From IMG/VR virus record IMGVR_UViG_3300028883_000032, positions 1-64,000 of that record: a DNA stretch of 64,000 bases, one strand, 5' to 3'. Below, in pieces: positions 3,795-57,225 of this stretch. A program made the translations under genes and the position numbers. Each line of letters begins with the position of its first letter. The first letter of the stretch is position 1. The notes below the pieces were generated by a model that did no database searches, was not told the DNA's origin, and saw only the letters and a list, made by a program, of their open reading frames with translations.

Positions 3795-4211
3795 ATGAAA
3801 ACAGAACATTTACAGCAATTACTTGTGTCCGGACAGTTTATAGGATCTCACATGTGCCTTGCCAAAGACATAGGATCAAACGGAAATCTCTTTGGGGGTA
3901 ACATGCTAGCTTGGGCAGACGAAATGGGTGCTATTTTTGCTAAAAAGTTTACTGGAGAACCAAAGCTCGTAACTGTTCAAATGGACGCGGTTGAATTCAC
4001 TGTTCCAGTACATGAAGGCGAAATAGTTGATTTCTATGCCGCTAACCCCAAACCCGGCCATACCAGTTTAACGTTCACTCTTGTTGTTGCCAAACCGAAC
4101 AATGCCGACGGGGTAAGACAAATTGTATTTACAACGCGATTTGTTTTCGTGGCTGTCGGCGATGATGGGCACTCCAAACCAATTGAAAGGTTTGCAGAAA
4201 AGCGCCCATAG
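3795..4211 (+). CDS. acyl-CoA thioesterase (hotdog fold)
   Basis: NGNLFGGNMLAWADE motif, VTVQMDAVEF, GHTS, FVFVAV; 3' end overlaps the tRNA. Confidence 0.85.
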   Translation: MKTEHLQQLLVSGQFIGSHMCLAKDIGSNGNLFGGNMLAWADEMGAIFAKKFTGEPKLVTVQMDAVEFTVPVHEGEIVDFYAANPKPGHTSLTFTLVVAKPNNADGVRQIVFTTRFVFVAVGDDGHSKPIERFAEKRP

Positions 4212-4274
4212 TTCAGTGGTTAGAACAGCGGACTCTAAATCCGTGTGTCCTCGGTTCAAGTCCGAGTGGGCGCA
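4202..4274 (+). tRNA. amber suppressor tRNA (CUA anticodon)
   Basis: GCGCCCA/TGGGCGC acceptor, anticodon stem GCGGA/TCCGT with loop CT-CTA-AA, T-loop TTCAAGT. Confidence 0.85.
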
Positions 4275-4287
4275 CAAAGGAGACCTA

Positions 4288-8821: not shown

Positions 8822-9358
8822 TTAACTCAAAGAATTTAGAATGTCATAAGCATTCTTTACTACATCACGAACTAGTGTTTTACCACCAGAGTAAACCCTT
8901 ACGATTGCGTTTTTTCTATTTACGTCCTTTTGAAATTTAGCGTTAGGGTAAATATCTAAGAAACCCTTAGCATCGCTTTTAGATTTTGCCAACACAACCA
9001 ATCTTATACTTTTGGCGCTATATACTTCAGTCAGCATTGAAGTTATTAAGTCTATTAAGTTTGGATCTTGGTTGCAAAATTGAAATATATTAGCTTTTTC
9101 TGTACGATACCCTTCACACAGATAAGCAATATGGCCTGCTATGCTAAGGTTAGTCTTTAATAAAGATTGATCCGGGTTTTGATGACTTACTCTGGGAAGA
9201 TAATTATATTCAGATGCACTACGCATAGAAATATTGTGAAATTTTAAATACTTACGAACTGTTTTGTGATCACATTTTAAAAGCATTCCAATTTCATAAG
9301 GATTTAATTTATCTTCTAAGTAGAGTTTTTCTAGTTCATGTTTAGTAAAATTCTTCAT
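8822..9358 (-). CDS. intron-encoded HTH + degenerate LAGLIDADG-like putative homing endonuclease
   Basis: 178 aa from MKNFTKHELEK; HTH (LYLEDKLNPYEIGMLLKCDHKTVRKYL) then IAYLCEG..FQFCNQDPNLI; antisense to the intron. Confidence 0.6.
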   Translation of the reverse strand: MKNFTKHELEKLYLEDKLNPYEIGMLLKCDHKTVRKYLKFHNISMRSASEYNYLPRVSHQNPDQSLLKTNLSIAGHIAYLCEGYRTEKANIFQFCNQDPNLIDLITSMLTEVYSAKSIRLVVLAKSKSDAKGFLDIYPNAKFQKDVNRKNAIVRVYSGGKTLVRDVVKNAYDILNSLS

Positions 9359-9626
9359 CCTGAGCCTTTGGTTAGAAATAACTAATTGAATTCGGCTATA
9401 TGCGGGAAACTCATAAAGCCTACAGTACCATACGTATACCAATAGTATACTAAATTGGAAATACGTTGTCAAGTAAAAATCTGTAGGATGTACAATTGAC
9501 AATCCGCAGGGAAGCCTGTAATGGCCCCTCAGAGACTAAACGCCGAACCCTTAACAGGTAATGCTGAAGGAGATGATATAGTCCAGACCACAACAGAATA
9601 TGGCTTGTGAAAGCAAGTGTGGTAAG
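8824..9626 (+). mobile_element. group I self-splicing intron (~803 nt) in the tRNA anticodon loop
   Basis: Core elements ATGCGGGAAACTC (P), AATCCGCAGGGAAG (Q), TCAGAGACTA (R), GATATAGTCC (S); ends in G; splice point +/-1 nt uncertain. Confidence 0.88.
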
Positions 9627-20557: not shown

Positions 20558-21318
20558 ATACTAAAATAAAAGATTTTTGGAATACAAGGTCTCTTGGTAA
20601 AAATCCGGGATCTGATGACTATCATATAAAAAATTTGGAGCTTAAAGCACTAATTAAAACTATACGCAGTATAGAAAACTCCCACAGCAATATCGCAGAT
20701 GTTGGGTGTGGAAACGGAGAAACACTTAACAAGCTGTGTGAGGTACTTAATTGTGCGGGTTTTGGGATAGATTATTCCAAAGGAATGGTTGATTCCGCAA
20801 ATAAGTTTGGCGGAGAAATGTTTGTAGAGGACGACATATCCGAAGACTTACAAAAGGACTATTTAGAGTCAAGTGTGGTTTATACGGAAAGATGCTTAAT
20901 AAACATATCACCAGAAAAAAGAAAAAAAGCTTTAGAGAATATTTATAAATTAGTAAAACCTAATGGATTTTATTTAATGATTGAAAGTTTTATCGAACCA
21001 TTAAATAGAATAAATGTAATAAGAGAAAAACTTAATCTGTATAGAATTGAACCTCCGTGGCATAACAGCTTTCTAAAAAGAGACGAAATAGTCAAATTAG
21101 CGACAGATTCGGGTTTTTCATTAATCGGAGAATACACATTCACAAGTTCCTACTACTTTTTGAGTAGAGTTGCTAATGCAAAGCTTTCAAATTTATTTGG
21201 CAGAACTCCCAAATACAACGACTTCTTAAATAATATAGGAGAGCACTTACCGTCTGTTGGGGATTTTGGTCCAGTAAAAATGTTAATTTGGGAGAAAGGT
21301 TGTCTTGAGAACAATTAA
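20554..21318 (+). CDS. class I SAM-dependent methyltransferase
   Basis: ADVGCGNG, GIDYSKGM, TERCLIN. Confidence 0.85.
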   Translation: MNTKIKDFWNTRSLGKNPGSDDYHIKNLELKALIKTIRSIENSHSNIADVGCGNGETLNKLCEVLNCAGFGIDYSKGMVDSANKFGGEMFVEDDISEDLQKDYLESSVVYTERCLINISPEKRKKALENIYKLVKPNGFYLMIESFIEPLNRINVIREKLNLYRIEPPWHNSFLKRDEIVKLATDSGFSLIGEYTFTSSYYFLSRVANAKLSNLFGRTPKYNDFLNNIGEHLPSVGDFGPVKMLIWEKGCLENN

Positions 21319-22405
21319 TTTATATAATCCAAACCTACAACTCCAAGATAAATTAGCAGTAATGGAAGCCCTTAATCTAGATTGGAGTTCTGGACAATAC
21401 TATAAACCGATAGAGCAGTTTGAAGCCGCTTTTGCAAATCGTGTGGGTCGCAAGTATGCGCTAATGACACCAAATTGTACAATAGCAATTGAACTTGCTT
21501 TACGAGCTCGCGGTATAAAAAAAGACAATTTGGTGGCCGTCCCAAACAATACATGGATAGGAAGCACAGCAGGGATACACACTGTTGGAGCTTCTCAAGT
21601 TGTGTGTGATGTTGGGCAACGAAGTTGGTGTTTAGAGGTAACTAATCTTATAGAAGCTGATTATAGATTAAACGCAGTGGTGGTTGTAGATTTATTTGGA
21701 CAAATGCCGGACTATAATTCATTATTAAATTATACAGAAAAACACGGCATATTCGTAATTGAAGACGCTGCGGAAGCATTAGGTTCAACATATAATGGAA
21801 AACCCGCTGGCTCTTTTGGGGATGTTAGTGTCTTCAGTTTTCATCGTTCAAAAACCATCGCTTGTGGAGAAGGTGGAATGGTAGTAACAGATAACGACAA
21901 ACTTTACGAGATGATGTGGACACTGCGCGATCAAGGCAGACCAAAAAGTTGCGAAACCTATAAAAATGAATACCTAGCACATAAATTTATTCCATCAAAT
22001 ATGCAGGCAGCTCTAGGATTAAGCCAGCTTATGAGGTTAGACAGCATTCTAGAACATAAGAGAAGGGTATTTAGGTGGTACCATAAACACATCAATATGG
22101 ACGACAAGTCTCTAACTCCTGATATCCCAGGAGTAAGTAATTCATATTGGGTACCTATTTTAGTATTTAAGGATAACACAATTAATACTGATTTTGTAAT
22201 TAACACATTAGCGAAAAATGGAATTTACACCAGGCGGTGTTTCTACCAACTATCAGAATTACCAGCATACTCAAGAATAGGGTTTTTTAGAAATAATACG
22301 CCTAATTGTAAATGGTTACAAGACCATGCCATTAATTTACCATCTCCGATGGATTTAACAGAAGAAGATGTCGAAAGGATAGCAGGAGTAATCAATATAT
22401 TATGA
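21305..22405 (+). CDS. DegT/DnrJ/EryC1/StrS sugar aminotransferase (perosamine synthase-like)
   Basis: IEDAAEALGS, SFHRSKTIACGEGG. Confidence 0.92.
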   Translation: MRTINLYNPNLQLQDKLAVMEALNLDWSSGQYYKPIEQFEAAFANRVGRKYALMTPNCTIAIELALRARGIKKDNLVAVPNNTWIGSTAGIHTVGASQVVCDVGQRSWCLEVTNLIEADYRLNAVVVVDLFGQMPDYNSLLNYTEKHGIFVIEDAAEALGSTYNGKPAGSFGDVSVFSFHRSKTIACGEGGMVVTDNDKLYEMMWTLRDQGRPKSCETYKNEYLAHKFIPSNMQAALGLSQLMRLDSILEHKRRVFRWYHKHINMDDKSLTPDIPGVSNSYWVPILVFKDNTINTDFVINTLAKNGIYTRRCFYQLSELPAYSRIGFFRNNTPNCKWLQDHAINLPSPMDLTEEDVERIAGVINIL

Positions 22406-24265: not shown

Positions 24266-25217
24266 ATTAGTAATAACCGGAGGATTGGGCCACATAGGAT
24301 CTGTAATATTAGCTAAACTATCCAATTTACGCGATTCCGGTAGAGGCTTTAGCGAAATAGTCATTATTGATGCATGTTTACAAAGACAAGAAACAGTATT
24401 CTTTGATAGTAATATCCCGTTGAGAAATTTTAAATTAATACAAAAAGTATTACCAACAGACAATATAGATGATGTGGTGGAAGTGCTGGATGGGGCGGAT
24501 GCCGTTATACATTTAGCAGCTGTTACTGATGCCCCAAGCACCTTTGAAAGACCCGAATATACGAGGATAACAAATGTTGATTCCACAAAACAACTTGTAA
24601 ATGCATGTGAAAAGGTGGGAGTGAAAAAATTTGTGTTTGCGTCGTCTACAAGTATATACGGGCCCTCCAAGAAAGTAAACTTAGAAAACGATGCATGCAT
24701 AAACCCACAAACCCCGTATGCCAGATCAAAGTTAGCCGCGGAGGATTTAGTATCCAAAACTGATATGAACTACGCAACATTCAGAATGGGTACAATATAT
24801 GGCTACACTCCCGGTATGCGTTTTCATACCGCTGTAAATAGGTTTATTTGGCAAGCTATAACCAAACAGCCAATCACCATCTGGTCAGGGGCAGCGGACA
24901 GTGTTAGGCCATATTGCCACGTGTATGCAGCATGTGAGGCTATGCTTCGATTTGTGTCACCAGTAAAGGATACCAAATCTGGAATCTATAATATAGTCTC
25001 TGATCACTATACCCCCAACTCCATAATTGAAGTTATCAAACAGGAGATCCCAAACGTAGAAGTGATAACAACCCCAACAAGAATACTTAACCAAGATTCT
25101 TATTTTGCACCTAATGATAAAGCCAATCAAGCCGGTTTATTGAAACAAGAATATGTGGGAAATACTGACCACTTATTAGATTACATTCGCTACATCAAAA
25201 CCAAGTTTGAAGGATGA
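24258..25217 (+). CDS. NAD-dependent epimerase/dehydratase
   Basis: TGGLGHIGS, HLAA, SSTSIYG, YARSK. Confidence 0.9.
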   Translation: MSKLVITGGLGHIGSVILAKLSNLRDSGRGFSEIVIIDACLQRQETVFFDSNIPLRNFKLIQKVLPTDNIDDVVEVLDGADAVIHLAAVTDAPSTFERPEYTRITNVDSTKQLVNACEKVGVKKFVFASSTSIYGPSKKVNLENDACINPQTPYARSKLAAEDLVSKTDMNYATFRMGTIYGYTPGMRFHTAVNRFIWQAITKQPITIWSGAADSVRPYCHVYAACEAMLRFVSPVKDTKSGIYNIVSDHYTPNSIIEVIKQEIPNVEVITTPTRILNQDSYFAPNDKANQAGLLKQEYVGNTDHLLDYIRYIKTKFEG

Positions 25218-26308
25218 TATTAACAAGTAGGCCTTGTATAGGCAAAGAAGAACAAGATGCGGCTATGAGGGTTTTAAAAAGTGGATGGTATATACACGGT
25301 CAAGAACTAGAATCATTTGAAAAAGAATTCGGAGAATATCACTCAACACATTGGTGGGGTAAAGAAGCCGTTGGAGTAAGTAATGGCACAGCCGCGCTAT
25401 TTTTAACTTTGCAGGCATACGGTGTTGGTCCGGGTGACGAGGTTATAGTACCTGAAGTGACTGCATTTCCTACAGCAGAAGCTGTCTGGCAATGTGGAGC
25501 GACTCCCGTTCCTGCCGCCGTTCATCCACATTCAAAATTACTTGACTTTCGTACAATAAAAGATTATACTACAAGTAGAACTAAAGCAATTATAGGTGTA
25601 CATTTATATGGGCAACCTTTACAAACAGTTGACTTTTATCAATTTGCACGTTCAGAAAATCTAATTTTTATTGAAGATTGTGCACAAGCTTTTGGAGCAA
25701 AATTAAACGATTTTCCCGTTGGTCTTTGTAGCGATGCCTCGTGCTTTTCTTTCTATCCTACCAAAAATATTACAGCTGCAGGGGATGGAGGAGCGGTTAT
25801 TTGCACACCAAAAATCGCTGACAAAATTAAGAAGTTAAGAAACCACGGAATAGTAAATTGTACTTGGGACCACACTGAAGTTGGTTGGAACTTCAGGATG
25901 AGTGAGCTGTCTGCGGCTATTTTAAGAGAACAGCTAAAAAAAGTAGACTGGTTTATTGAAGAACGCAGGAAACTAGCATTTAATTACATTGATTTGTTAT
26001 CTACGTTTCAACCATACAATAATGGGTCGAAAGCGGACAGATATATAATCCCCAAAACTTATACTCCGGGAGCCAAACACTCTTATCACTTATTTGTGAT
26101 TCAAGCAAGAAACATACGCGATTTAATGTGTACGGAAGATAATTTCAGCCTTATTGATGTAAAACCCGGGTATCATTATCCGTATACTATTACATCAAAT
26201 CGAGATAAACCAATTCAAAGTATAGACAACTTTAATTGTATTAGCCTTCCTTTGTATGTAGGCTTAACAGAAAAAGAGCAAGAACTAATAGTAAACCACA
26301 TATTTTAA
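25214..26308 (+). CDS. DegT/DnrJ/EryC1/StrS sugar aminotransferase
   Basis: SNGTAAL, IEDCAQAFG, SFYPTKNITAAGDGG. Confidence 0.92.
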   Translation: MILTSRPCIGKEEQDAAMRVLKSGWYIHGQELESFEKEFGEYHSTHWWGKEAVGVSNGTAALFLTLQAYGVGPGDEVIVPEVTAFPTAEAVWQCGATPVPAAVHPHSKLLDFRTIKDYTTSRTKAIIGVHLYGQPLQTVDFYQFARSENLIFIEDCAQAFGAKLNDFPVGLCSDASCFSFYPTKNITAAGDGGAVICTPKIADKIKKLRNHGIVNCTWDHTEVGWNFRMSELSAAILREQLKKVDWFIEERRKLAFNYIDLLSTFQPYNNGSKADRYIIPKTYTPGAKHSYHLFVIQARNIRDLMCTEDNFSLIDVKPGYHYPYTITSNRDKPIQSIDNFNCISLPLYVGLTEKEQELIVNHIF

Positions 26309-43559: not shown

Positions 43560-43635
43560 GGGGCCCTAGCTCAGTTGGGAGAGCGCCGGCTTTGCAAGCC
43601 GGAGGTCATCGGTTCGATCCCGATGGGCTCCACCA
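43560..43635 (+). tRNA. tRNA-Ala(UGC)
   Basis: G3:U70, loop TT-TGC-AA, CCA. Confidence 0.95.
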
Positions 43636-47734: not shown

Positions 47735-48605
47735 AAAAAGAGCTGCCCAGTACTTTATACCTCACGATTTTAAAGAAGAGGTAGAAGTGCTTAACCAGTC
47801 TTCTTACTGTATATGGATGACCCCGCTAGCCTTTCAAAAAATGTGGCATTTTGTCGATATTTGTAGTCAAGAAGTTGGCTGGCTTGGATCGGTTGAACGA
47901 GAGGGAAGAAATTTCATTATAACCGATGTTTTCATGTTTGAGCAAGAAGTTACAGGGACTACAACATCTCTCGATGAAGCTGGCCAGACTAAACTTATGG
48001 AAAATTTTCTGGCACAAGAGAATGGTACAGAGCTTTATAACTCTATAAGGTTCTGGGGACATAGTCATGTTAACATGGGAACAACTCCAAGTGGTCAAGA
48101 TGAAACCACAATGAAGGAATTCGAAGAAAATGGCTGTGCGTGGTTTATAAGAGGCATATTCAACAAAAGAGGACGAGCACAGTTTGATATATTTTTATAC
48201 GACGAAGGTGTACGAGTAAACGATGTTCGTTGGGCAATTCTTGTTGAAATGCCGGAATTTGATATCCGCAAAGAGTTGGAAACTGAAATACAAAAGAAGG
48301 TTACCACAAAAAAGTATGTATATCCTTCGTACGCAGGTGGATGGGGAGGAGGAAATGGCTATGACCCTACCAAGAGGACTGGGAATGGTACTGTTAACCA
48401 CTCAGTCCACCCTACTGTAGGTCAAGGGAACCGCTCATCGTCACAGCAGGGAAATGTCTGGGACGAATTTTATACGGCAAATCCAAGCGGAACTCTTGAC
48501 CTAGATGAAGACGACGAAGGAACAACCTTTTTCAACAATAATGGAGTTGTTGAAGAACTAAAACCAGAAACTAAAAAAGAGACAAAAAAGGACAAAACTA
48601 AATGA
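47712..48605 (+). CDS. JAB/MPN-family metalloprotease
   Basis: QEVGWLG..EQEVTG..WGHSHVNMGTTPSGQD; low-complexity tail. Confidence 0.88.
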   Translation: MAKKKPNKKRAAQYFIPHDFKEEVEVLNQSSYCIWMTPLAFQKMWHFVDICSQEVGWLGSVEREGRNFIITDVFMFEQEVTGTTTSLDEAGQTKLMENFLAQENGTELYNSIRFWGHSHVNMGTTPSGQDETTMKEFEENGCAWFIRGIFNKRGRAQFDIFLYDEGVRVNDVRWAILVEMPEFDIRKELETEIQKKVTTKKYVYPSYAGGWGGGNGYDPTKRTGNGTVNHSVHPTVGQGNRSSSQQGNVWDEFYTANPSGTLDLDEDDEGTTFFNNNGVVEELKPETKKETKKDKTK

Positions 48606-49294
48606 TCGATCCTTTACGTCACTTGGCTATTTTTGATCCTGATGCCTTTGGTCCCCGACGAGTTGATGTAATAGGTGTGGGTGCAACTGGATCAAAAGTT
48701 GTGTTGGAACTTGCAAAACTCGGCATAGTTAACATTCACGTATGGGATTATGACAAAGTCGAAGAACACAATGTTCCCAACCAAGTTTTTGGAAATGATC
48801 ATGTTGGGATGTTCAAAGTTGACGCCATATCAAAAATTGTCAAGGCACAAACTGGTATTGACTTAGTAACTCATAACGAAGAAGTAGACGGTACTCAAAC
48901 TTTTGGTGATATAGTATTCTTGCTAACCGACACCATGAAAAGCCGTAAATCAATCTTTGAGAGGGGCATTAAATATAAATTTAATGTCAAATTAATGATT
49001 GAAACGCGGATGGGAAAAGACAGCGGGCAGATATACTCCATCATTCCGACAAAACCGGATCACATCAAAAATTGGGAAAATTCCCTGTTTAGCGATGATG
49101 ACAAAGATACTGAAGTATCTCTATGTGGAAGTACAATAACTGTTGGGTCAACTGCCGGAATAATTTCGGGCCTAGCGGTTTGGAAAGTCATTGAATGGCT
49201 TCAACACGAAACCGGCAAACTGGAAAATGGAATTGCTAACGAAACAATGATTGATATTTCCCCCAAGTTAGCAGTTTATCAAAACAAATATTAA
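48602..49294 (+). CDS. ThiF/E1-like activating enzyme
   Basis: GVGATGS, WDYDKVEEHNVPNQ, KV, TDTMKSR, ETRMG, candidate catalytic Cys SLCG. Confidence 0.92.
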   Translation: MIDPLRHLAIFDPDAFGPRRVDVIGVGATGSKVVLELAKLGIVNIHVWDYDKVEEHNVPNQVFGNDHVGMFKVDAISKIVKAQTGIDLVTHNEEVDGTQTFGDIVFLLTDTMKSRKSIFERGIKYKFNVKLMIETRMGKDSGQIYSIIPTKPDHIKNWENSLFSDDDKDTEVSLCGSTITVGSTAGIISGLAVWKVIEWLQHETGKLENGIANETMIDISPKLAVYQNKY

Positions 49295-53504: not shown

Positions 53505-53774
53505 ATGGGTAGTTTAACAGACCAAGTTGCTCCTAAAGAAAAATTAAAAAATAAAGAGACAGGAGAAACAGGTAAACCGGTAATTGTTATACTTAAAACA
53601 GAAAGCGGACAGTTGGGAGTCCAGTGGGATCAAGACAACATGAACAAGGCAGACGTATTTCAAGCATTAGTCGCGTCGGCCGGTATTTTGGAACGTAAAA
53701 TAATGGAAGAAGTGGAAGCATTTAAAAAAGATGTTAAAGCTATTGATGTGCCACCAACTATAAAGGAAAAATAA
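53505..53774 (+). CDS. hypothetical protein
   Basis: 89-aa ORF, AACCA at -14. Confidence 0.55.
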   Translation: MGSLTDQVAPKEKLKNKETGETGKPVIVILKTESGQLGVQWDQDNMNKADVFQALVASAGILERKIMEEVEAFKKDVKAIDVPPTIKEK

Positions 53775-54184
53775 TGTTGCGTAAAGTGTGCGTAATTGTA
53801 CGCGGGTTGCCCGGTTCAGGAAAAACTGAATTTACAAATTTCTTGAACACGCTGTCTATGGATGGTATTAATATTTTCACAACCGACGATTTTTTCACGC
53901 GTCGGGGACAATATAAGTTTGATGGCTCAAAACTTGCCGAAGCCCATAAATGGAATTTTAAACGTTTTTGCGCTACAGTAAAAGCGGGAGCAACTTACGT
54001 GGCAGTAGCTAACACAGCTACCCGCGAGGAAGAATTTCGTTCTTACAAGGAATTTGCAGAAAAACACGGTTACAAAGTATATGTAATTACTGTGGAAAAC
54101 TGGCACGGTAATAAAAATGTACACGGAGTTCCAGACGAGAATCTGGACAAAATGGACGAACGCTACGAGTTGCGTTTGCGTTAG
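53774..54184 (+). CDS. P-loop kinase (AAA_33 / polynucleotide kinase-like)
   Basis: RGLPGSGKT, TDDFF, AHKW, VANT, NVHGVP. Confidence 0.85.
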   Translation: MLRKVCVIVRGLPGSGKTEFTNFLNTLSMDGINIFTTDDFFTRRGQYKFDGSKLAEAHKWNFKRFCATVKAGATYVAVANTATREEEFRSYKEFAEKHGYKVYVITVENWHGNKNVHGVPDENLDKMDERYELRLR

Positions 54185-54341: not shown

Positions 54342-54416
54342 AGGGTCGTAGCTCAGCTTGGTTAGAGTGCCGGCCTGTCACGCCGGAAGTCACGGGTTCG
54401 AATCCCGTCGGTCCTG
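54342..54416 (+). tRNA. tRNA-Asp(GUC)
   Basis: Cloverleaf, loop CT-GTC-AC, G73. Confidence 0.93.
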
Positions 54417-54418
54417 CA

Positions 54419-54760: not shown

Positions 54761-55159
54761 ATGACAAAAACTGAATTTCGAGAATTGTGGAAAGCTGCAG
54801 AAGAAAGCGGATTAGATAGATTCACTGTTATCTACTTAAGTTCCGGAGCCAAACACAATGGGCTGCTAGGAGAAATACTATTCAAACAGAATAGTATAGG
54901 AAACTCATACCCGAGTGTATTTTTTTCAGGAACGGGGCAAAGAATTACTACCTCCCTCGACAAATTAGTTGCAACGGAACAAAATTTTATTCGAACTCCA
55001 AAGGAACTGCAACCTGGATTAGAAATCTTGGTTATGGCTAATGAAGGTTCATTAGATATTGTTAATGAATCAGAAGCAATAAAGAAATTACAAAAAGATC
55101 CCAAAACAAAAATATTTACGTGTTTAATACGAAAGCAAGTTGAATTAAGACTTGTGTAA
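54761..55159 (+). CDS. hypothetical protein
   Basis: 132 aa, AAGGA RBS. Confidence 0.6.
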   Translation: MTKTEFRELWKAAEESGLDRFTVIYLSSGAKHNGLLGEILFKQNSIGNSYPSVFFSGTGQRITTSLDKLVATEQNFIRTPKELQPGLEILVMANEGSLDIVNESEAIKKLQKDPKTKIFTCLIRKQVELRLV

Positions 55160-56093
55160 TCAAGGAGATAAAAATGCTGGGAGCTCTACGGGCCTAATGG
55201 CCCCCCACAAAGTTATTGATGTAGTACAAGAAGAGTTTTATAAAGTAAATTTAACTTTAGACAATAATTTTAGATTGTCACCCCCAGACAAAACAACAAA
55301 TTTTACAACGGCAGGAATGCAGTGGTTTAAGAACCGCTTTAATAATCCGGACGGGACAAGATGTGGTAGCAGACAATCTTGTTTACGTACAAACGATTTG
55401 TCCTTAATTGGGGACGGGACACATTTAACCTATTTTGAAATGCTGGGAAATTTTTCATTTGGAAATAACGATTATGAACAATCGGTAGAATTGTGGCACA
55501 ATATTGTTTCTCAATTAAAAATCCCAGTTACATATGTTACGGTACACCCGTCACAAAAATACCATAAGAGAGTTTGGGAGAGGTTGCATTACCCCATAAA
55601 AGAAGACGAAAGCTGCGTGTGGTCAGACGGTAATATCGGAGGATACTGTTGTGAAATGTTTGTTAATGACCTCGAAATCGGGAATCTGGTAAATACTTCT
55701 GGAGTTTCAACAGATGTGGGTTTTGGTTTTGAGAGGTTAGTACAAGTTTATGAAAACCAAACAAATATTCATGACACAACTTTGTTTGATTGCTCTTTAC
55801 CTCCTTTTGTCAGAGACCACGTTCGCGCCTTGAATGCGTTATATCTTAACGGTATAAAACCGGGAGCAAGTGGACCAAATTACTCCGCCAAACTAATACT
55901 CAGAAGAGTACTATCTCATCTTGACCCAAAATGTTATAAGTTTGGGCACTGGTTAGAACAAGAAAAACTAATTAGTGAAGATGGTAAGTACAGAGCTAAA
56001 AAACACTTTAACCGCTATGGTATTAAAGACTATGACTTTGTTAAAGCCACATTTGGTTTAACAGCCGAAGAATATGAGGAAGTACTATCGTGA
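55152..56093 (+). CDS. truncated alanyl-tRNA synthetase-like protein (catalytic core only)
   Basis: DKTTNFTTAGMQ.FK, QSCLRTNDL..IGDGTHLTYFEMLGNFSF, EIGNLV, DVGFGFERL, RDHVRA..G.KP...GPNY...LILRR. Confidence 0.85.
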   Translation: MCNQGDKNAGSSTGLMAPHKVIDVVQEEFYKVNLTLDNNFRLSPPDKTTNFTTAGMQWFKNRFNNPDGTRCGSRQSCLRTNDLSLIGDGTHLTYFEMLGNFSFGNNDYEQSVELWHNIVSQLKIPVTYVTVHPSQKYHKRVWERLHYPIKEDESCVWSDGNIGGYCCEMFVNDLEIGNLVNTSGVSTDVGFGFERLVQVYENQTNIHDTTLFDCSLPPFVRDHVRALNALYLNGIKPGASGPNYSAKLILRRVLSHLDPKCYKFGHWLEQEKLISEDGKYRAKKHFNRYGIKDYDFVKATFGLTAEEYEEVLS

Positions 56094-57058: not shown

Positions 57059-57132
57059 ATCCTCGTAGCTCAATTGGATAGAGCGCTGCGCTACGAACGC
57101 AGAGGTTGGGGGTTCGATCCCCTCCGAGGGTA
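57059..57132 (+). tRNA. tRNA-Arg(ACG)
   Basis: Cloverleaf, A20, loop CT-ACG-AA. Confidence 0.95.
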
Positions 57133-57225
57133 CAAACAAAAGGAGAAATTGTAGGATTTCTAGCAATTAGCTTAGCAGGAGATAAGAGCTGTAGTTATAG
57201 GGACTATTCAAACCAAACAAAAATA

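What the first reader, a model, noticed from the sequence alone, without database searches (positions are those of the whole stretch)
55152..56093. Stand-alone mini alanyl-tRNA synthetase
Seen: ~300 aa with AlaRS class II motifs 1-3 and part of the tRNA-recognition helix, ending cleanly with no editing or C-Ala domain in adjacent ORFs. Known: full AlaRS is ~870 aa and needs editing to clear Ser/Gly. Inference: it may charge the phage tRNA-Ala, mischarge, act on the atypical tRNA-like RNAs nearby, or be a repurposed amino-acid ligase.
Basis: partly seen in the sequence, partly recalled or inferred. Interest (0 to 1): 0.6.

Follow-up and report, generated by a model that had tools for sequence, protein, structure and literature searches.

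The report
Ultra-compact phage alanyl-tRNA synthetase homologue
A 207-kb phage from marine sediment carries an intact, conserved gene for a one-third-size version of the enzyme that loads alanine onto tRNA; it belongs to a large, uncharacterised family found mostly in phages, and if active on tRNA it would be far smaller than any alanyl-tRNA synthetase tested so far.

Summary
Window 55152-56093 (+) is one open frame. Its likely start is ATG 55197, giving 298 aa. It is an AlaRS homologue with no editing or C-Ala domain in the protein or anywhere in the complete 206,856-bp phage genome.

It is not a remnant. More than 500 homologues of 255-320 aa exist, with 39 loci on IMG/VR viral contigs. dN/dS is 0.04-0.16 in unsaturated pairs. 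All ATP- and alanine-pocket residues of AlaRS are invariant.

The AlphaFold2 model (pLDDT 92) aligns over all 298 residues to AlaRS aminoacylation fragments (Z 27.5). The protein is a shrunken catalytic core plus a shrunken tRNA-recognition domain. It is not a truncation.

The family sits in phage tRNA arrays in many genomes. It also occurs as a rare chromosomal paralogue beside full-length AlaRS in a few Planctomycetota MAGs.

In the window's copy both G3:U70-contact positions are Ala and the branch is long. The phage carries two G3:U70 acceptors, tRNA-Ala(UGC) and a tmRNA.

Best reading: an editing-free minimal alanine-activating enzyme that alanylates acceptor stems. Adenylate formation is strongly supported. 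tRNA charging is inferred, so confidence in the whole statement is about 0.5. I rate it a new variant of a known kind, interest 0.6.

The parts
55197..56093 (+). Most likely coding sequence of the compact AlaRS homologue (298 aa plus stop). The open frame itself starts at TTG 55152.
   Evidence: ORF list and translation. Family and AlaRS N-termini align from this Met. GC 0.375 and GC3 0.321 are typical of the genome.
55197..55796 (+). Shrunken class II catalytic core (residues 1-200) with motifs 1-3. AlaRS residues R69, W170, E209, N212, V214, D235, G237 and the motif-3 Arg are all present.
   Evidence: Alignment to Salmonella AlaRS. Invariant columns R64, W142, E160, N163, V165, D173, G175, E179, R180 in alignment A1. 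The same residues are unchanged in 49 loci. The model has an antiparallel sheet at pLDDT 92.
55374..55463 (+). Motif 2 region ('QSCLRT..NDL...FEMLGNFSFG'). The motif-2 loop lacks the four residues 'GGKH' that the five bacterial and phage-borne AlaRS references carry, including E. coli K73.
   Evidence: Alignments.
55707..55739 (+). Motif 3 ('STDVGFGFERL'). It holds the Asp that grips the amino group of alanine (E. coli D235) and the motif-3 Arg.
55803..56090 (+). Shrunken tRNA-recognition (acceptor-stem binding, 'ATL') domain of five helices. The positions equivalent to E. coli N303 and D400 are A224 (nt 55866-55868) and A284 (nt 56046-56048).
   Evidence: Profile-profile alignment, probability 100, aligns the family motif [FW]W[WY][ED]TFG with AlaRS LYDTYGFP. 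The structural alignment runs from model residue 1-298 to AlaRS 2-402/420.
55162..55197 (+). Possible translational coupling element. Shine-Dalgarno AAGGAG (55162-55167) is followed by a 7-codon mini-ORF, MLGALRA (ATG 55174). Its TAA overlaps the main ATG as TAATG. This part is inferred only.
   Evidence: Read directly from the sequence. Not tested in relatives.
43560..43635 (+). Phage tRNA-Ala(UGC) with G3:U70, A73 and an encoded CCA. It is the candidate cognate substrate.
   Evidence: ARAGORN structure. Rfam tRNA match at 68 bits.

Best explanation
The gene encodes a working, editing-free, ultra-compact alanine-activating enzyme. It consists of a trimmed class II AlaRS catalytic core fused to a trimmed acceptor-stem-binding domain.

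Proposed mechanism:
- Step 1, strongly supported by sequence and fold: it binds ATP and L-alanine in an unchanged AlaRS pocket and forms alanyl-AMP.
- Step 2, inferred: it transfers alanine to the 3' end of an RNA acceptor stem using only the small helical domain. The likely acceptors are the phage's or host's tRNA-Ala and possibly the phage tmRNA. No contact is made with the tRNA elbow.

Because there is no editing domain, Ser and Gly mischarging would have to be cleared in trans by host AlaRS, AlaX or DTD. The likely benefit to the phage is a small, host-independent supply of Ala-tRNA during infection. The gene travels with phage tRNA gene arrays.
For: Homology and fold:
- PF01411 E 2.4e-20. 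PDB AlaRS fragments E 5e-14.
- AF2 model pLDDT 92.2, pTM 0.88.
- All 298 residues align to AlaRS aminoacylation fragments: Z 27.5, rmsd 3.3-4.0 A. GlyQ and HisRS reach only about Z 15-16.

Active site:
- R69, W170, E209, N212, V214, D235, G237 and the motif-3 Arg are invariant in 42 aligned homologues and unchanged in 49 loci from both subfamilies.

Selection:
- 521 homologues of 255-320 aa at about 50% identity.
- dN/dS 0.04-0.16 for pairs with dS 0.1-0.9.
- The gene's composition matches the genome.

tRNA-binding part retained:
- The basic helix R306/R311/R312/R315/R316 is kept.
- An acidic residue sits at the D400-equivalent position in 86 of 120 members.
- Asn sits at the N303-equivalent position in 57 of 119 members.

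Context:
- 23 of the 39 IMG/VR viral loci have tRNA genes within 6 kb. Several have 8-22 of them. In about ten loci a tRNA abuts the gene.
- The window gene lies between tRNA-Asp and tRNA-Arg.
- The phage carries tRNA-Ala(UGC) and a tmRNA, both with G3:U70 and A73.

Precedent:
- The 461-aa Tupanvirus mini-AlaRS lacks editing, C-Ala and both G3:U70-contact residues. It still charges tRNA-Ala and a microhelix specifically (PMC10036535).
Against: - No assay exists for any member.
- The motif-2 loop lacks 'GGKH', including K73. From my own knowledge, K73 lies near the tRNA 3' end in E. coli AlaRS.
- The window copy has Ala at both G3:U70-contact positions, and R306P and R312L in the basic helix.
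- It deviates at 8 of 89 conserved columns, against a family median of 3. Its terminal branch is 0.78 against a median of 0.27.
- The family coexists with full-length AlaRS in Planctomycetota and Woesebacteria MAGs. That fits a specialised, non-housekeeping role.
- tRNA-Ala is not reliably the nearest tRNA. It is nearest in 3 of about 22 loci, and two of those belong to one clade.
- From my own knowledge of the 1980s Schimmel-laboratory fragment work, E. coli AlaRS fragments shorter than about 461 residues charge tRNA poorly. The N461 fragment binds tRNA weakly.
Confidence: 0.5

Rival explanations
1. It is an alanine (or similar small acid) adenylate-forming ligase whose acceptor is not tRNA. 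The acceptor could be a protein lysine, a carrier protein or a small molecule. Truncated aaRS paralogues such as amino acid:carrier-protein ligases, AsnA and EpmA work this way, as does the reported lysine-lactyltransferase activity of AlaRS.
For: - It is a paralogue beside full-length AlaRS on clearly chromosomal Planctomycetota contigs. Neighbours include topoisomerase I, a histidine kinase and an ECF sigma factor.
- The motif-2 loop deletion removes K73.
- The G3:U70-contact positions are variable, and both are Ala in the window copy.
- It is the only aaRS-like gene found among the five Pfam families tested in this genome.
- AARS1-mediated lactylation appears in the titles returned. The details come from my own knowledge.
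Against: - The whole acceptor-stem-binding domain is kept under selection, including its basic helix and the TFG motif.
- No conserved neighbouring gene, carrier protein or otherwise, was found in 55 loci.
- The family is strongly embedded in tRNA arrays in phages.
- No fused extra domains were found in longer members.
Confidence: 0.25
2. It is a deliberately error-prone or broadened charger. Without editing and with altered recognition residues, it would load Ser/Gly onto tRNA-Ala, or Ala onto non-cognate phage tRNAs. That would remodel translation during infection.
For: - No editing domain in the protein or the genome.
- The pocket is identical to that of AlaRS. From my own knowledge (Guo et al. 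2009), that pocket inherently activates Ser and Gly.
- The window clade has lost both the Asn and the Asp equivalents.
Against: - Host AlaRS, AlaX and DTD can edit in trans (my own knowledge).
- TuAlaRS lacks the same residues and yet stays G3:U70-specific.
- The suppressor tRNA has G3:C70, and there is no sign of recoding in the genome.
Confidence: 0.12
3. It is a non-catalytic binder, decoy or regulator, or a decaying remnant of a captured alaS gene.
For: - The window copy has a long terminal branch and 8 deviations at conserved columns.
- One relative, L056, carries an internal stop, and L045 is frameshifted.
Against: - Every catalytic residue is invariant.
- dN/dS is 0.04-0.16.
- The frame is intact and the codon composition is genome-typical.
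- The fold is predicted with high confidence.
Confidence: 0.05

Closest known systems
Tupanvirus mini-AlaRS (TuAlaRS, 461 aa; PMC10036535) and the similar giant-virus proteins of Terrestrivirus (464 aa) and Yasminevirus (513 aa)
   Same: - It is virus-encoded and has only the aminoacylation part, with no editing or C-Ala domain.
- The window copy likewise lacks the conserved Asn and Asp that read G3:U70.
- These are the only clear AlaRS-like matches in the BFVD viral structure library (E 9e-15 and 5e-14).
   Different: - TuAlaRS has full-size catalytic and tRNA-recognition domains and is related to its eukaryotic host's enzyme.
- The phage protein is 298 aa. It has at least five internal deletions: 'GGKH' in motif 2, about 15 aa near E. 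coli residue 150, 19 aa at 188-207, 12 aa at 216-227, and most of 325-350.
- It aligns better with bacterial and eukaryotic-type AlaRS than with archaeal AlaRS.
- It has not been assayed.
N-terminal aminoacylation fragments of bacterial AlaRS (E. coli N461, PDB 3hxu; A. aeolicus 1riq)
   Same: The fold is the same over all 298 residues (Z 27.0-27.4, 25-28% identity). The ATP and alanine pockets are identical.
   Different: It is about 140-160 residues shorter. It is a natural, selected stand-alone gene, not a laboratory truncation.
Bacterial GlyRS alpha subunit (GlyQ, about 300 aa)
   Same: It has a similar size and belongs to the same class II subclass. It is a stand-alone catalytic core followed by a helical region.
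   Different: - It is a much weaker match: Z 15.7 over 174-179 residues, TMq about 0.47, and no PF02091 hit.
- GlyQ needs the beta subunit for tRNA binding. No partner gene is conserved next to the phage family.
'small-AlaRS' of CPR, DPANN and other lineages (about 600 aa; bioRxiv 10.1101/2023.05.29.542759; NCBIfam NF002436)
   Same: It is a reduced AlaRS that supports the idea of a functional catalytic + ATL core. NF002436 matches at 62.8 bits.
   Different: small-AlaRS keeps the editing domain. The phage family does not, and it falls far below the NF002436 cut-off of 529 bits.
Split AlaRS of Nanoarchaeum equitans
   Same: Its catalytic piece is separated from the editing and C-Ala parts (described in PMC10036535).
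   Different: A second subunit supplies the missing parts and the G3:U70 specificity. Here no such gene was found in the genome or conserved beside the family.

Membership tests
Alanyl-tRNA synthetase (AlaRS, TIGR00344 alaS equivalog) | Class II catalytic core of the AlaRS type (PF01411) with motifs 1-3 | tested here: met
   PF01411 at 73 bits against a cut-off of 30.3. PDB AlaRS E 5e-14. Structural Z 27.5.
Alanyl-tRNA synthetase (AlaRS, TIGR00344 alaS equivalog) | Alanine and ATP pocket residues (E. coli R69, W170, N212, V214, D235, G237, motif-3 Arg) | tested here: met
   All are present in the window copy and invariant in the family.
Alanyl-tRNA synthetase (AlaRS, TIGR00344 alaS equivalog) | tRNA-recognition domain with Asn (N303) and Asp (D400) that read G3:U70 | tested here: not met
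   The domain is present in reduced form. The window copy has Ala at both positions. Across the family, Asn occurs in 57 of 119 members and Asp/Glu in 86 of 120.
Alanyl-tRNA synthetase (AlaRS, TIGR00344 alaS equivalog) | Editing domain (tRNA_SAD) and C-Ala domain | tested here: not met
   The protein ends at residue 298. There is no PF07973 match anywhere in the 206,856-bp genome, while the control found it in 14 of 14 genomes.
Alanyl-tRNA synthetase (AlaRS, TIGR00344 alaS equivalog) | Score above the curated equivalog cut-off | tested here: not met
   79.2 bits against 457 for TIGR00344. 62.8 bits against 529 for NF002436.
Alanyl-tRNA synthetase (AlaRS, TIGR00344 alaS equivalog) | Alanylation of tRNA-Ala | not testable with these tools
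   This needs ATP-PPi exchange and aminoacylation assays.
Viral mini-AlaRS of the Tupanvirus type | Virus-encoded, aminoacylation part only, no editing or C-Ala domain | tested here: met
   G000 is a virus record with CheckV completeness 100%.
Viral mini-AlaRS of the Tupanvirus type | Intact full-length catalytic and tRNA-recognition domains (about 460 aa) | tested here: not met
   The protein is 298 aa with multiple internal deletions relative to AlaRS residues 1-420.
Bacterial GlyRS alpha subunit (GlyQ) | PF02091 signature and closest fold match to GlyQ | tested here: not met
   No PF02091 hit. Z 15.7 against 27.5 for AlaRS.
Amino acid:carrier-protein ligases and other aaRS-derived non-tRNA ligases | Conserved adjacent carrier protein or acceptor gene | tested here: not met
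   No neighbour family is shared across the 55 loci beyond close relatives.

The most novel reading that the evidence does not exclude
This family is a natural minimal AlaRS of about 260-310 aa: a catalytic core plus a bare acceptor-stem latch. It would charge G3:U70 acceptor stems, meaning tRNA-Ala and perhaps phage tmRNA, with no elbow contact and no editing. That would make it much the smallest AlaRS shown to charge tRNA. It would also be a living counterpart of the proposed ancestral catalytic + ATL core, spread by phages and occasionally captured by bacteria.
Probability: 0.4. Interest if true: 0.8.

Novelty: new variant of a known kind. Interest (0 to 1): 0.6.

Why it matters
AlaRS is the textbook case of acceptor-stem-only tRNA recognition, and its domain plan is otherwise almost invariant across life. 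A selected 298-residue version, widespread in phages, would be useful in four ways.

- It would mark out the natural lower size limit for a specific aminoacyl-tRNA synthetase.
- It would test the idea that a catalytic domain plus an acceptor-stem 'latch' is a sufficient, ancestral unit.
- It would offer a very small scaffold for engineered or orthogonal translation.
- It would show that phages with large tRNA sets supplement charging for one particular amino acid. Alanine is also the amino acid that loads tmRNA.

If the acceptor turns out not to be tRNA, the family would be a new aaRS-derived ligase used by phages.

Tried and rejected
- Conserved partner gene. An all-against-all comparison of ORFs in 55 loci found no neighbour shared beyond close relatives.
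- tRNA-Ala adjacency. tRNA-Ala lies within 6 kb in 10 loci, but it is the nearest tRNA in only 3 of about 22, and two of those are in one clade. I do not claim enrichment.
- tmRNA co-occurrence. Rfam tmRNA scores above its cut-off in 4 of 37 records holding the gene. It lies within 2.5 kb of the gene in L010 and L047, but about 95 kb away in the window's genome. This is suggestive only, and no control set was run.
- Alternative genetic code. Making TAG a sense codon gains no more than doing the same for TGA or TAA, so the standard code holds.
- Suppressor tRNA as substrate. It has G3:C70.
- Other aaRS in the genome. PF00587, PF00152, PF00133 and PF00749 gave no match. The other aaRS Pfam families were not searched.
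- Fusions. Members of 352-401 aa have only unannotated N-terminal extensions, probably miscalled starts.
- Expression data. The only run that holds the stretch is a DNA run from a marine sediment metagenome, probably the source sample.
- Literature. Searches for a phage mini-AlaRS found only the Tupanvirus paper and the 'small-AlaRS' preprint. PHROGs has only a full-length AlaRS family, phrog_28604.
- The large representative-protein search was not run. The word search already gave a deep family, and no claim here rests on absence of relatives.
- Complex prediction was not used, because no protein partner is proposed.

Full report
**What is there**

Window 55152-56093 (+) is a single open frame of 313 codons counted from TTG. 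The in-frame ATG at 55197 gives 298 aa. Both the relatives and AlaRS itself begin to align at that Met, so I take 55197-56093 as the gene.

The window is the first 64 kb of a 206,856-bp IMG/VR virus record with CheckV completeness 100%. The genome has:
- 27 tRNA genes and a tmRNA;
- a terminase-like gene at 94.1 kb;
- ribonucleotide reductase, ThyX and a DNA ligase within the window.

The only public run that holds the stretch is a marine sediment metagenome.

**Is it an AlaRS homologue?**

Yes.
- Pfam PF01411 matches at E 2.4e-20.
- The best solved relatives by sequence are AlaRS catalytic fragments (1riq, E 5e-14).
- An AlphaFold2 model built on 42 homologues has mean pLDDT 92.2 and pTM 0.88.
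- Foldseek ranks AlaRS aminoacylation fragments first (E about 2e-15, TMq 0.8).
- VIA-align places all 298 residues on AlaRS residues 2 to about 402-420, with Z 27.5 and rmsd 3.3-4.0 A. GlyQ and HisRS reach only about Z 15-16.

It is far below the curated AlaRS equivalog thresholds: 79 bits against 457, and 63 against 529.

**Anatomy**

I aligned 120 family members with Salmonella and Acinetobacter AlaRS. The ATP and alanine pocket is fully kept. In mature E. coli numbering these are R69, W170, E209, N212, V214, D235, G237 and the motif-3 Glu-Arg. They are invariant in alignment A1 and unchanged in 49 loci from both subfamilies.

The protein is short because of internal deletions, not truncation:
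- 'GGKH' in the motif-2 loop, which includes K73;
- about 15 residues near position 150;
- the 19-residue insertion at 188-207;
- 12 residues at 216-227;
- about 14 residues before the helical domain;
- most of 325-350.

A profile-profile alignment (probability 100) carries the family's C-terminal motif [FW]-W-[WY]-[ED]-T-F-G onto the AlaRS motif L-Y-D-T-Y-G-F-P. This agrees with the structural range. So the last 95 residues are a complete but reduced tRNA-recognition (acceptor-stem, 'ATL') domain.

At the two positions that read G3:U70 in E. coli AlaRS (N303 and D400; PMC10036535):
- the family has Asn in 57 of 119 members and Asp/Glu in 86 of 120;
- the window copy has Ala at both (A224 and A284 of the 298-aa protein);
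- the window copy also has R306P, R311K and R312L in the basic helix.

**No missing parts elsewhere**
- There is no tRNA_SAD editing domain anywhere in the genome. The control found it in 14 of 14 genomes.
- There is no second PF01411 match.
- No member of four other major aaRS Pfam families was found.
- No neighbouring gene is conserved across 55 loci.

**It is a family under selection**

The word-based protein search returned 521 homologues. All carry PF01411, and the 120 best range from 254 to 401 aa with a median of 290 aa and about 50% identity. A pattern scan of IMG/VR found 39 viral loci on contigs from 7 kb to 608 kb, with GC 0.24-0.59. Where a start could be called, the ORFs are 235-332 aa.

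Nei-Gojobori dN/dS for unsaturated pairs (dS 0.1-0.9) is 0.04-0.16. The window gene has genome-typical GC and GC3. This rejects the pseudogene reading.

The window copy is nevertheless one of the more divergent members:
- 8 deviations at 89 conserved columns, against a family median of 3;
- a terminal branch of 0.78 against a median of 0.27;
- its whole small clade (window, L002, L009, L010, L016) has relaxed both G3:U70-contact positions.

**Where the family lives**

A maximum-likelihood tree puts all compact proteins on one side of a 100%-supported branch against five full-length bacterial or phage-borne AlaRS. They split into two subfamilies. One is purely viral. The other mixes viral contigs with a clade from Planctomycetota MAGs.

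In phages the gene typically sits inside tRNA arrays:
- 23 of the 39 IMG/VR loci have tRNA genes within 6 kb;
- several have 8-22 tRNAs;
- in about ten loci a tRNA abuts the gene.

In the window it lies between tRNA-Asp (54342-54417) and tRNA-Arg (57059-57133).

The bacterial copies are real chromosomal genes. Their neighbours include topoisomerase I, NfeD, a histidine kinase, an ECF sigma factor and a DUF1559 protein. Three of the four Planctomycetota MAGs searched also encode a full-length AlaRS of 907-961 codons; the search found none in the fourth (G002). The Woesebacteria MAG has a 620-codon one.

They are rare, though. In an even sample of 201 Planctomycetota genomes, only 2 had a compact-type match. 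The others matched only through their full-length AlaRS. The picture is a phage-centred gene that is sporadically present in cells. The direction of transfer is not resolved.

**Candidate substrates in this phage**
- tRNA-Ala(UGC) at 43560-43635 has G1:C72, G2:C71, G3:U70, A73 and an encoded CCA.
- The tmRNA at genome position 150804-151167 (tag GETPVLKAA) also has G3:U70 and A73.
- The suppressor tRNA(CUA) at 4202-4275 has G3:C70 and is not a canonical substrate.
- tmRNA lies within 2.5 kb of the gene in two other phages. Overall it is above the Rfam cut-off in only 4 of 37 records, many of them fragments. I treat the tmRNA idea as a lead, not a finding.

**Mechanism**

Shown by sequence and fold: an intact AlaRS-type adenylation site and a retained acceptor-stem-binding domain.

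Inferred:
- alanyl-AMP formation;
- transfer to A76 of a G3:U70 acceptor stem without elbow contact or editing;
- mischarged Ser- or Gly-tRNA-Ala being left to host trans-editing.

The Tupanvirus enzyme shows that an AlaRS without editing, C-Ala or the Asn/Asp pair can still be efficient and G3:U70-specific (PMC10036535). The 'small-AlaRS' preprint argues that catalytic plus ATL domains form a functional core.

Three things argue against tRNA charging:
- the motif-2 loop deletion;
- the degenerate recognition helix in this copy;
- coexistence with full-length AlaRS in cells.

These keep a non-tRNA ligase role alive at about 0.25.

**Comparison and novelty**

Giant-virus mini-AlaRS proteins (461-513 aa) are the only clear AlaRS-like matches in the BFVD viral structure library. 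PHROGs holds only a full-length AlaRS family. Among deposited phage records, the only compact-type relative is an unannotated stretch of the 635-kb uncultured phage LR745206.1. Databases label family members automatically as 'alanine--tRNA ligase-related/family protein'. Literature searches found no study of them.

I therefore rate it a new variant of a known kind: a much smaller, internally deleted, phage-borne form of the viral mini-AlaRS idea, not yet assayed.

**Limits**
- All functional statements are inferences from sequence, predicted structure and context.
- The residue-level equivalence of A284 with D400 rests on the profile alignment and motif match plus the range of the structural alignment. 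It does not rest on a residue-by-residue structural superposition.
- The statements about K73 and about E. coli N-terminal fragments come from my own knowledge of the 1980s Schimmel-laboratory work and were not re-read here.

Noticed in passing
window 55162-55197: A strong Shine-Dalgarno sequence (AAGGAG) serves a 7-codon mini-ORF, MLGALRA, and not the main ATG. The mini-ORF's TAA overlaps the main start as TAATG. This suggests termination-reinitiation coupling or a leader peptide with two Ala codons.
   Followed up: no
G000 150804-151167 (outside the window): A phage-encoded tmRNA with tag GETPVLKAA and a G3:U70/A73 acceptor, so it is a second potential AlaRS substrate. tmRNA also lies within 2.5 kb downstream of the compact AlaRS gene in L010 and L047.
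   Followed up: partly
window 4202-4275: An amber suppressor tRNA(CUA), which ARAGORN calls 'Pyl', with a G3:C70 acceptor. Stop-codon reassignment tests give no sign that TAG is a sense codon in this genome. Two such suppressor tRNAs also sit just upstream of the compact AlaRS gene in L012 and L014.
   Followed up: partly
window 9345-9604 (+): A group I catalytic intron (Rfam RF00028, 71 bits against a gathering score of 50). Its host gene was not examined.
   Followed up: no
G000 162777-162851 (outside the window): ARAGORN calls a tRNA with a four-base anticodon 'ataa'. It may be a frameshift-suppressor-like tRNA or a miscalled one.
   Followed up: no
L002 (ENA ERZ27248692 k141_839137, 858,992 bp); L056 (802,945 bp); L003 (669,302 bp); L029 (607,744 bp): Family members lie on very long contigs. 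L002 has 17 tRNA genes within 6.5 kb upstream of the gene, which looks phage-like. If the 859-kb contig is one phage genome, it would exceed the 735-kb record cited in PMC7162821.
   Followed up: no
L035 4492-4579, L036 5287-5374, L044 5275-5362: An 88-nt tRNA-like call with anticodon AGC, U3:A70 and a long extra arm lies about 600 nt upstream of the compact AlaRS gene in three related phages. Its anticodon stem pairs poorly, so it may be a pseudo-tRNA or hold an intron.
   Followed up: partly
L061 2881-4680 (MT835476.1, 114-kb 'Bacteriophage sp.' contig): A 594-aa short AlaRS, apparently the small-AlaRS type with an editing part. It shows that phage-labelled contigs carry at least two different reduced AlaRS forms.
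   Followed up: no
window 21305-22405 and 25214-26308; 48602-49294; 53774-54184: Two paralogous aminotransferase genes (phrog_3139), a ThiF-family E1-like gene and a small AAA_33 P-loop kinase-like gene lie among the tRNA genes. They may relate to nucleotide, sugar or RNA-repair functions.
   Followed up: no
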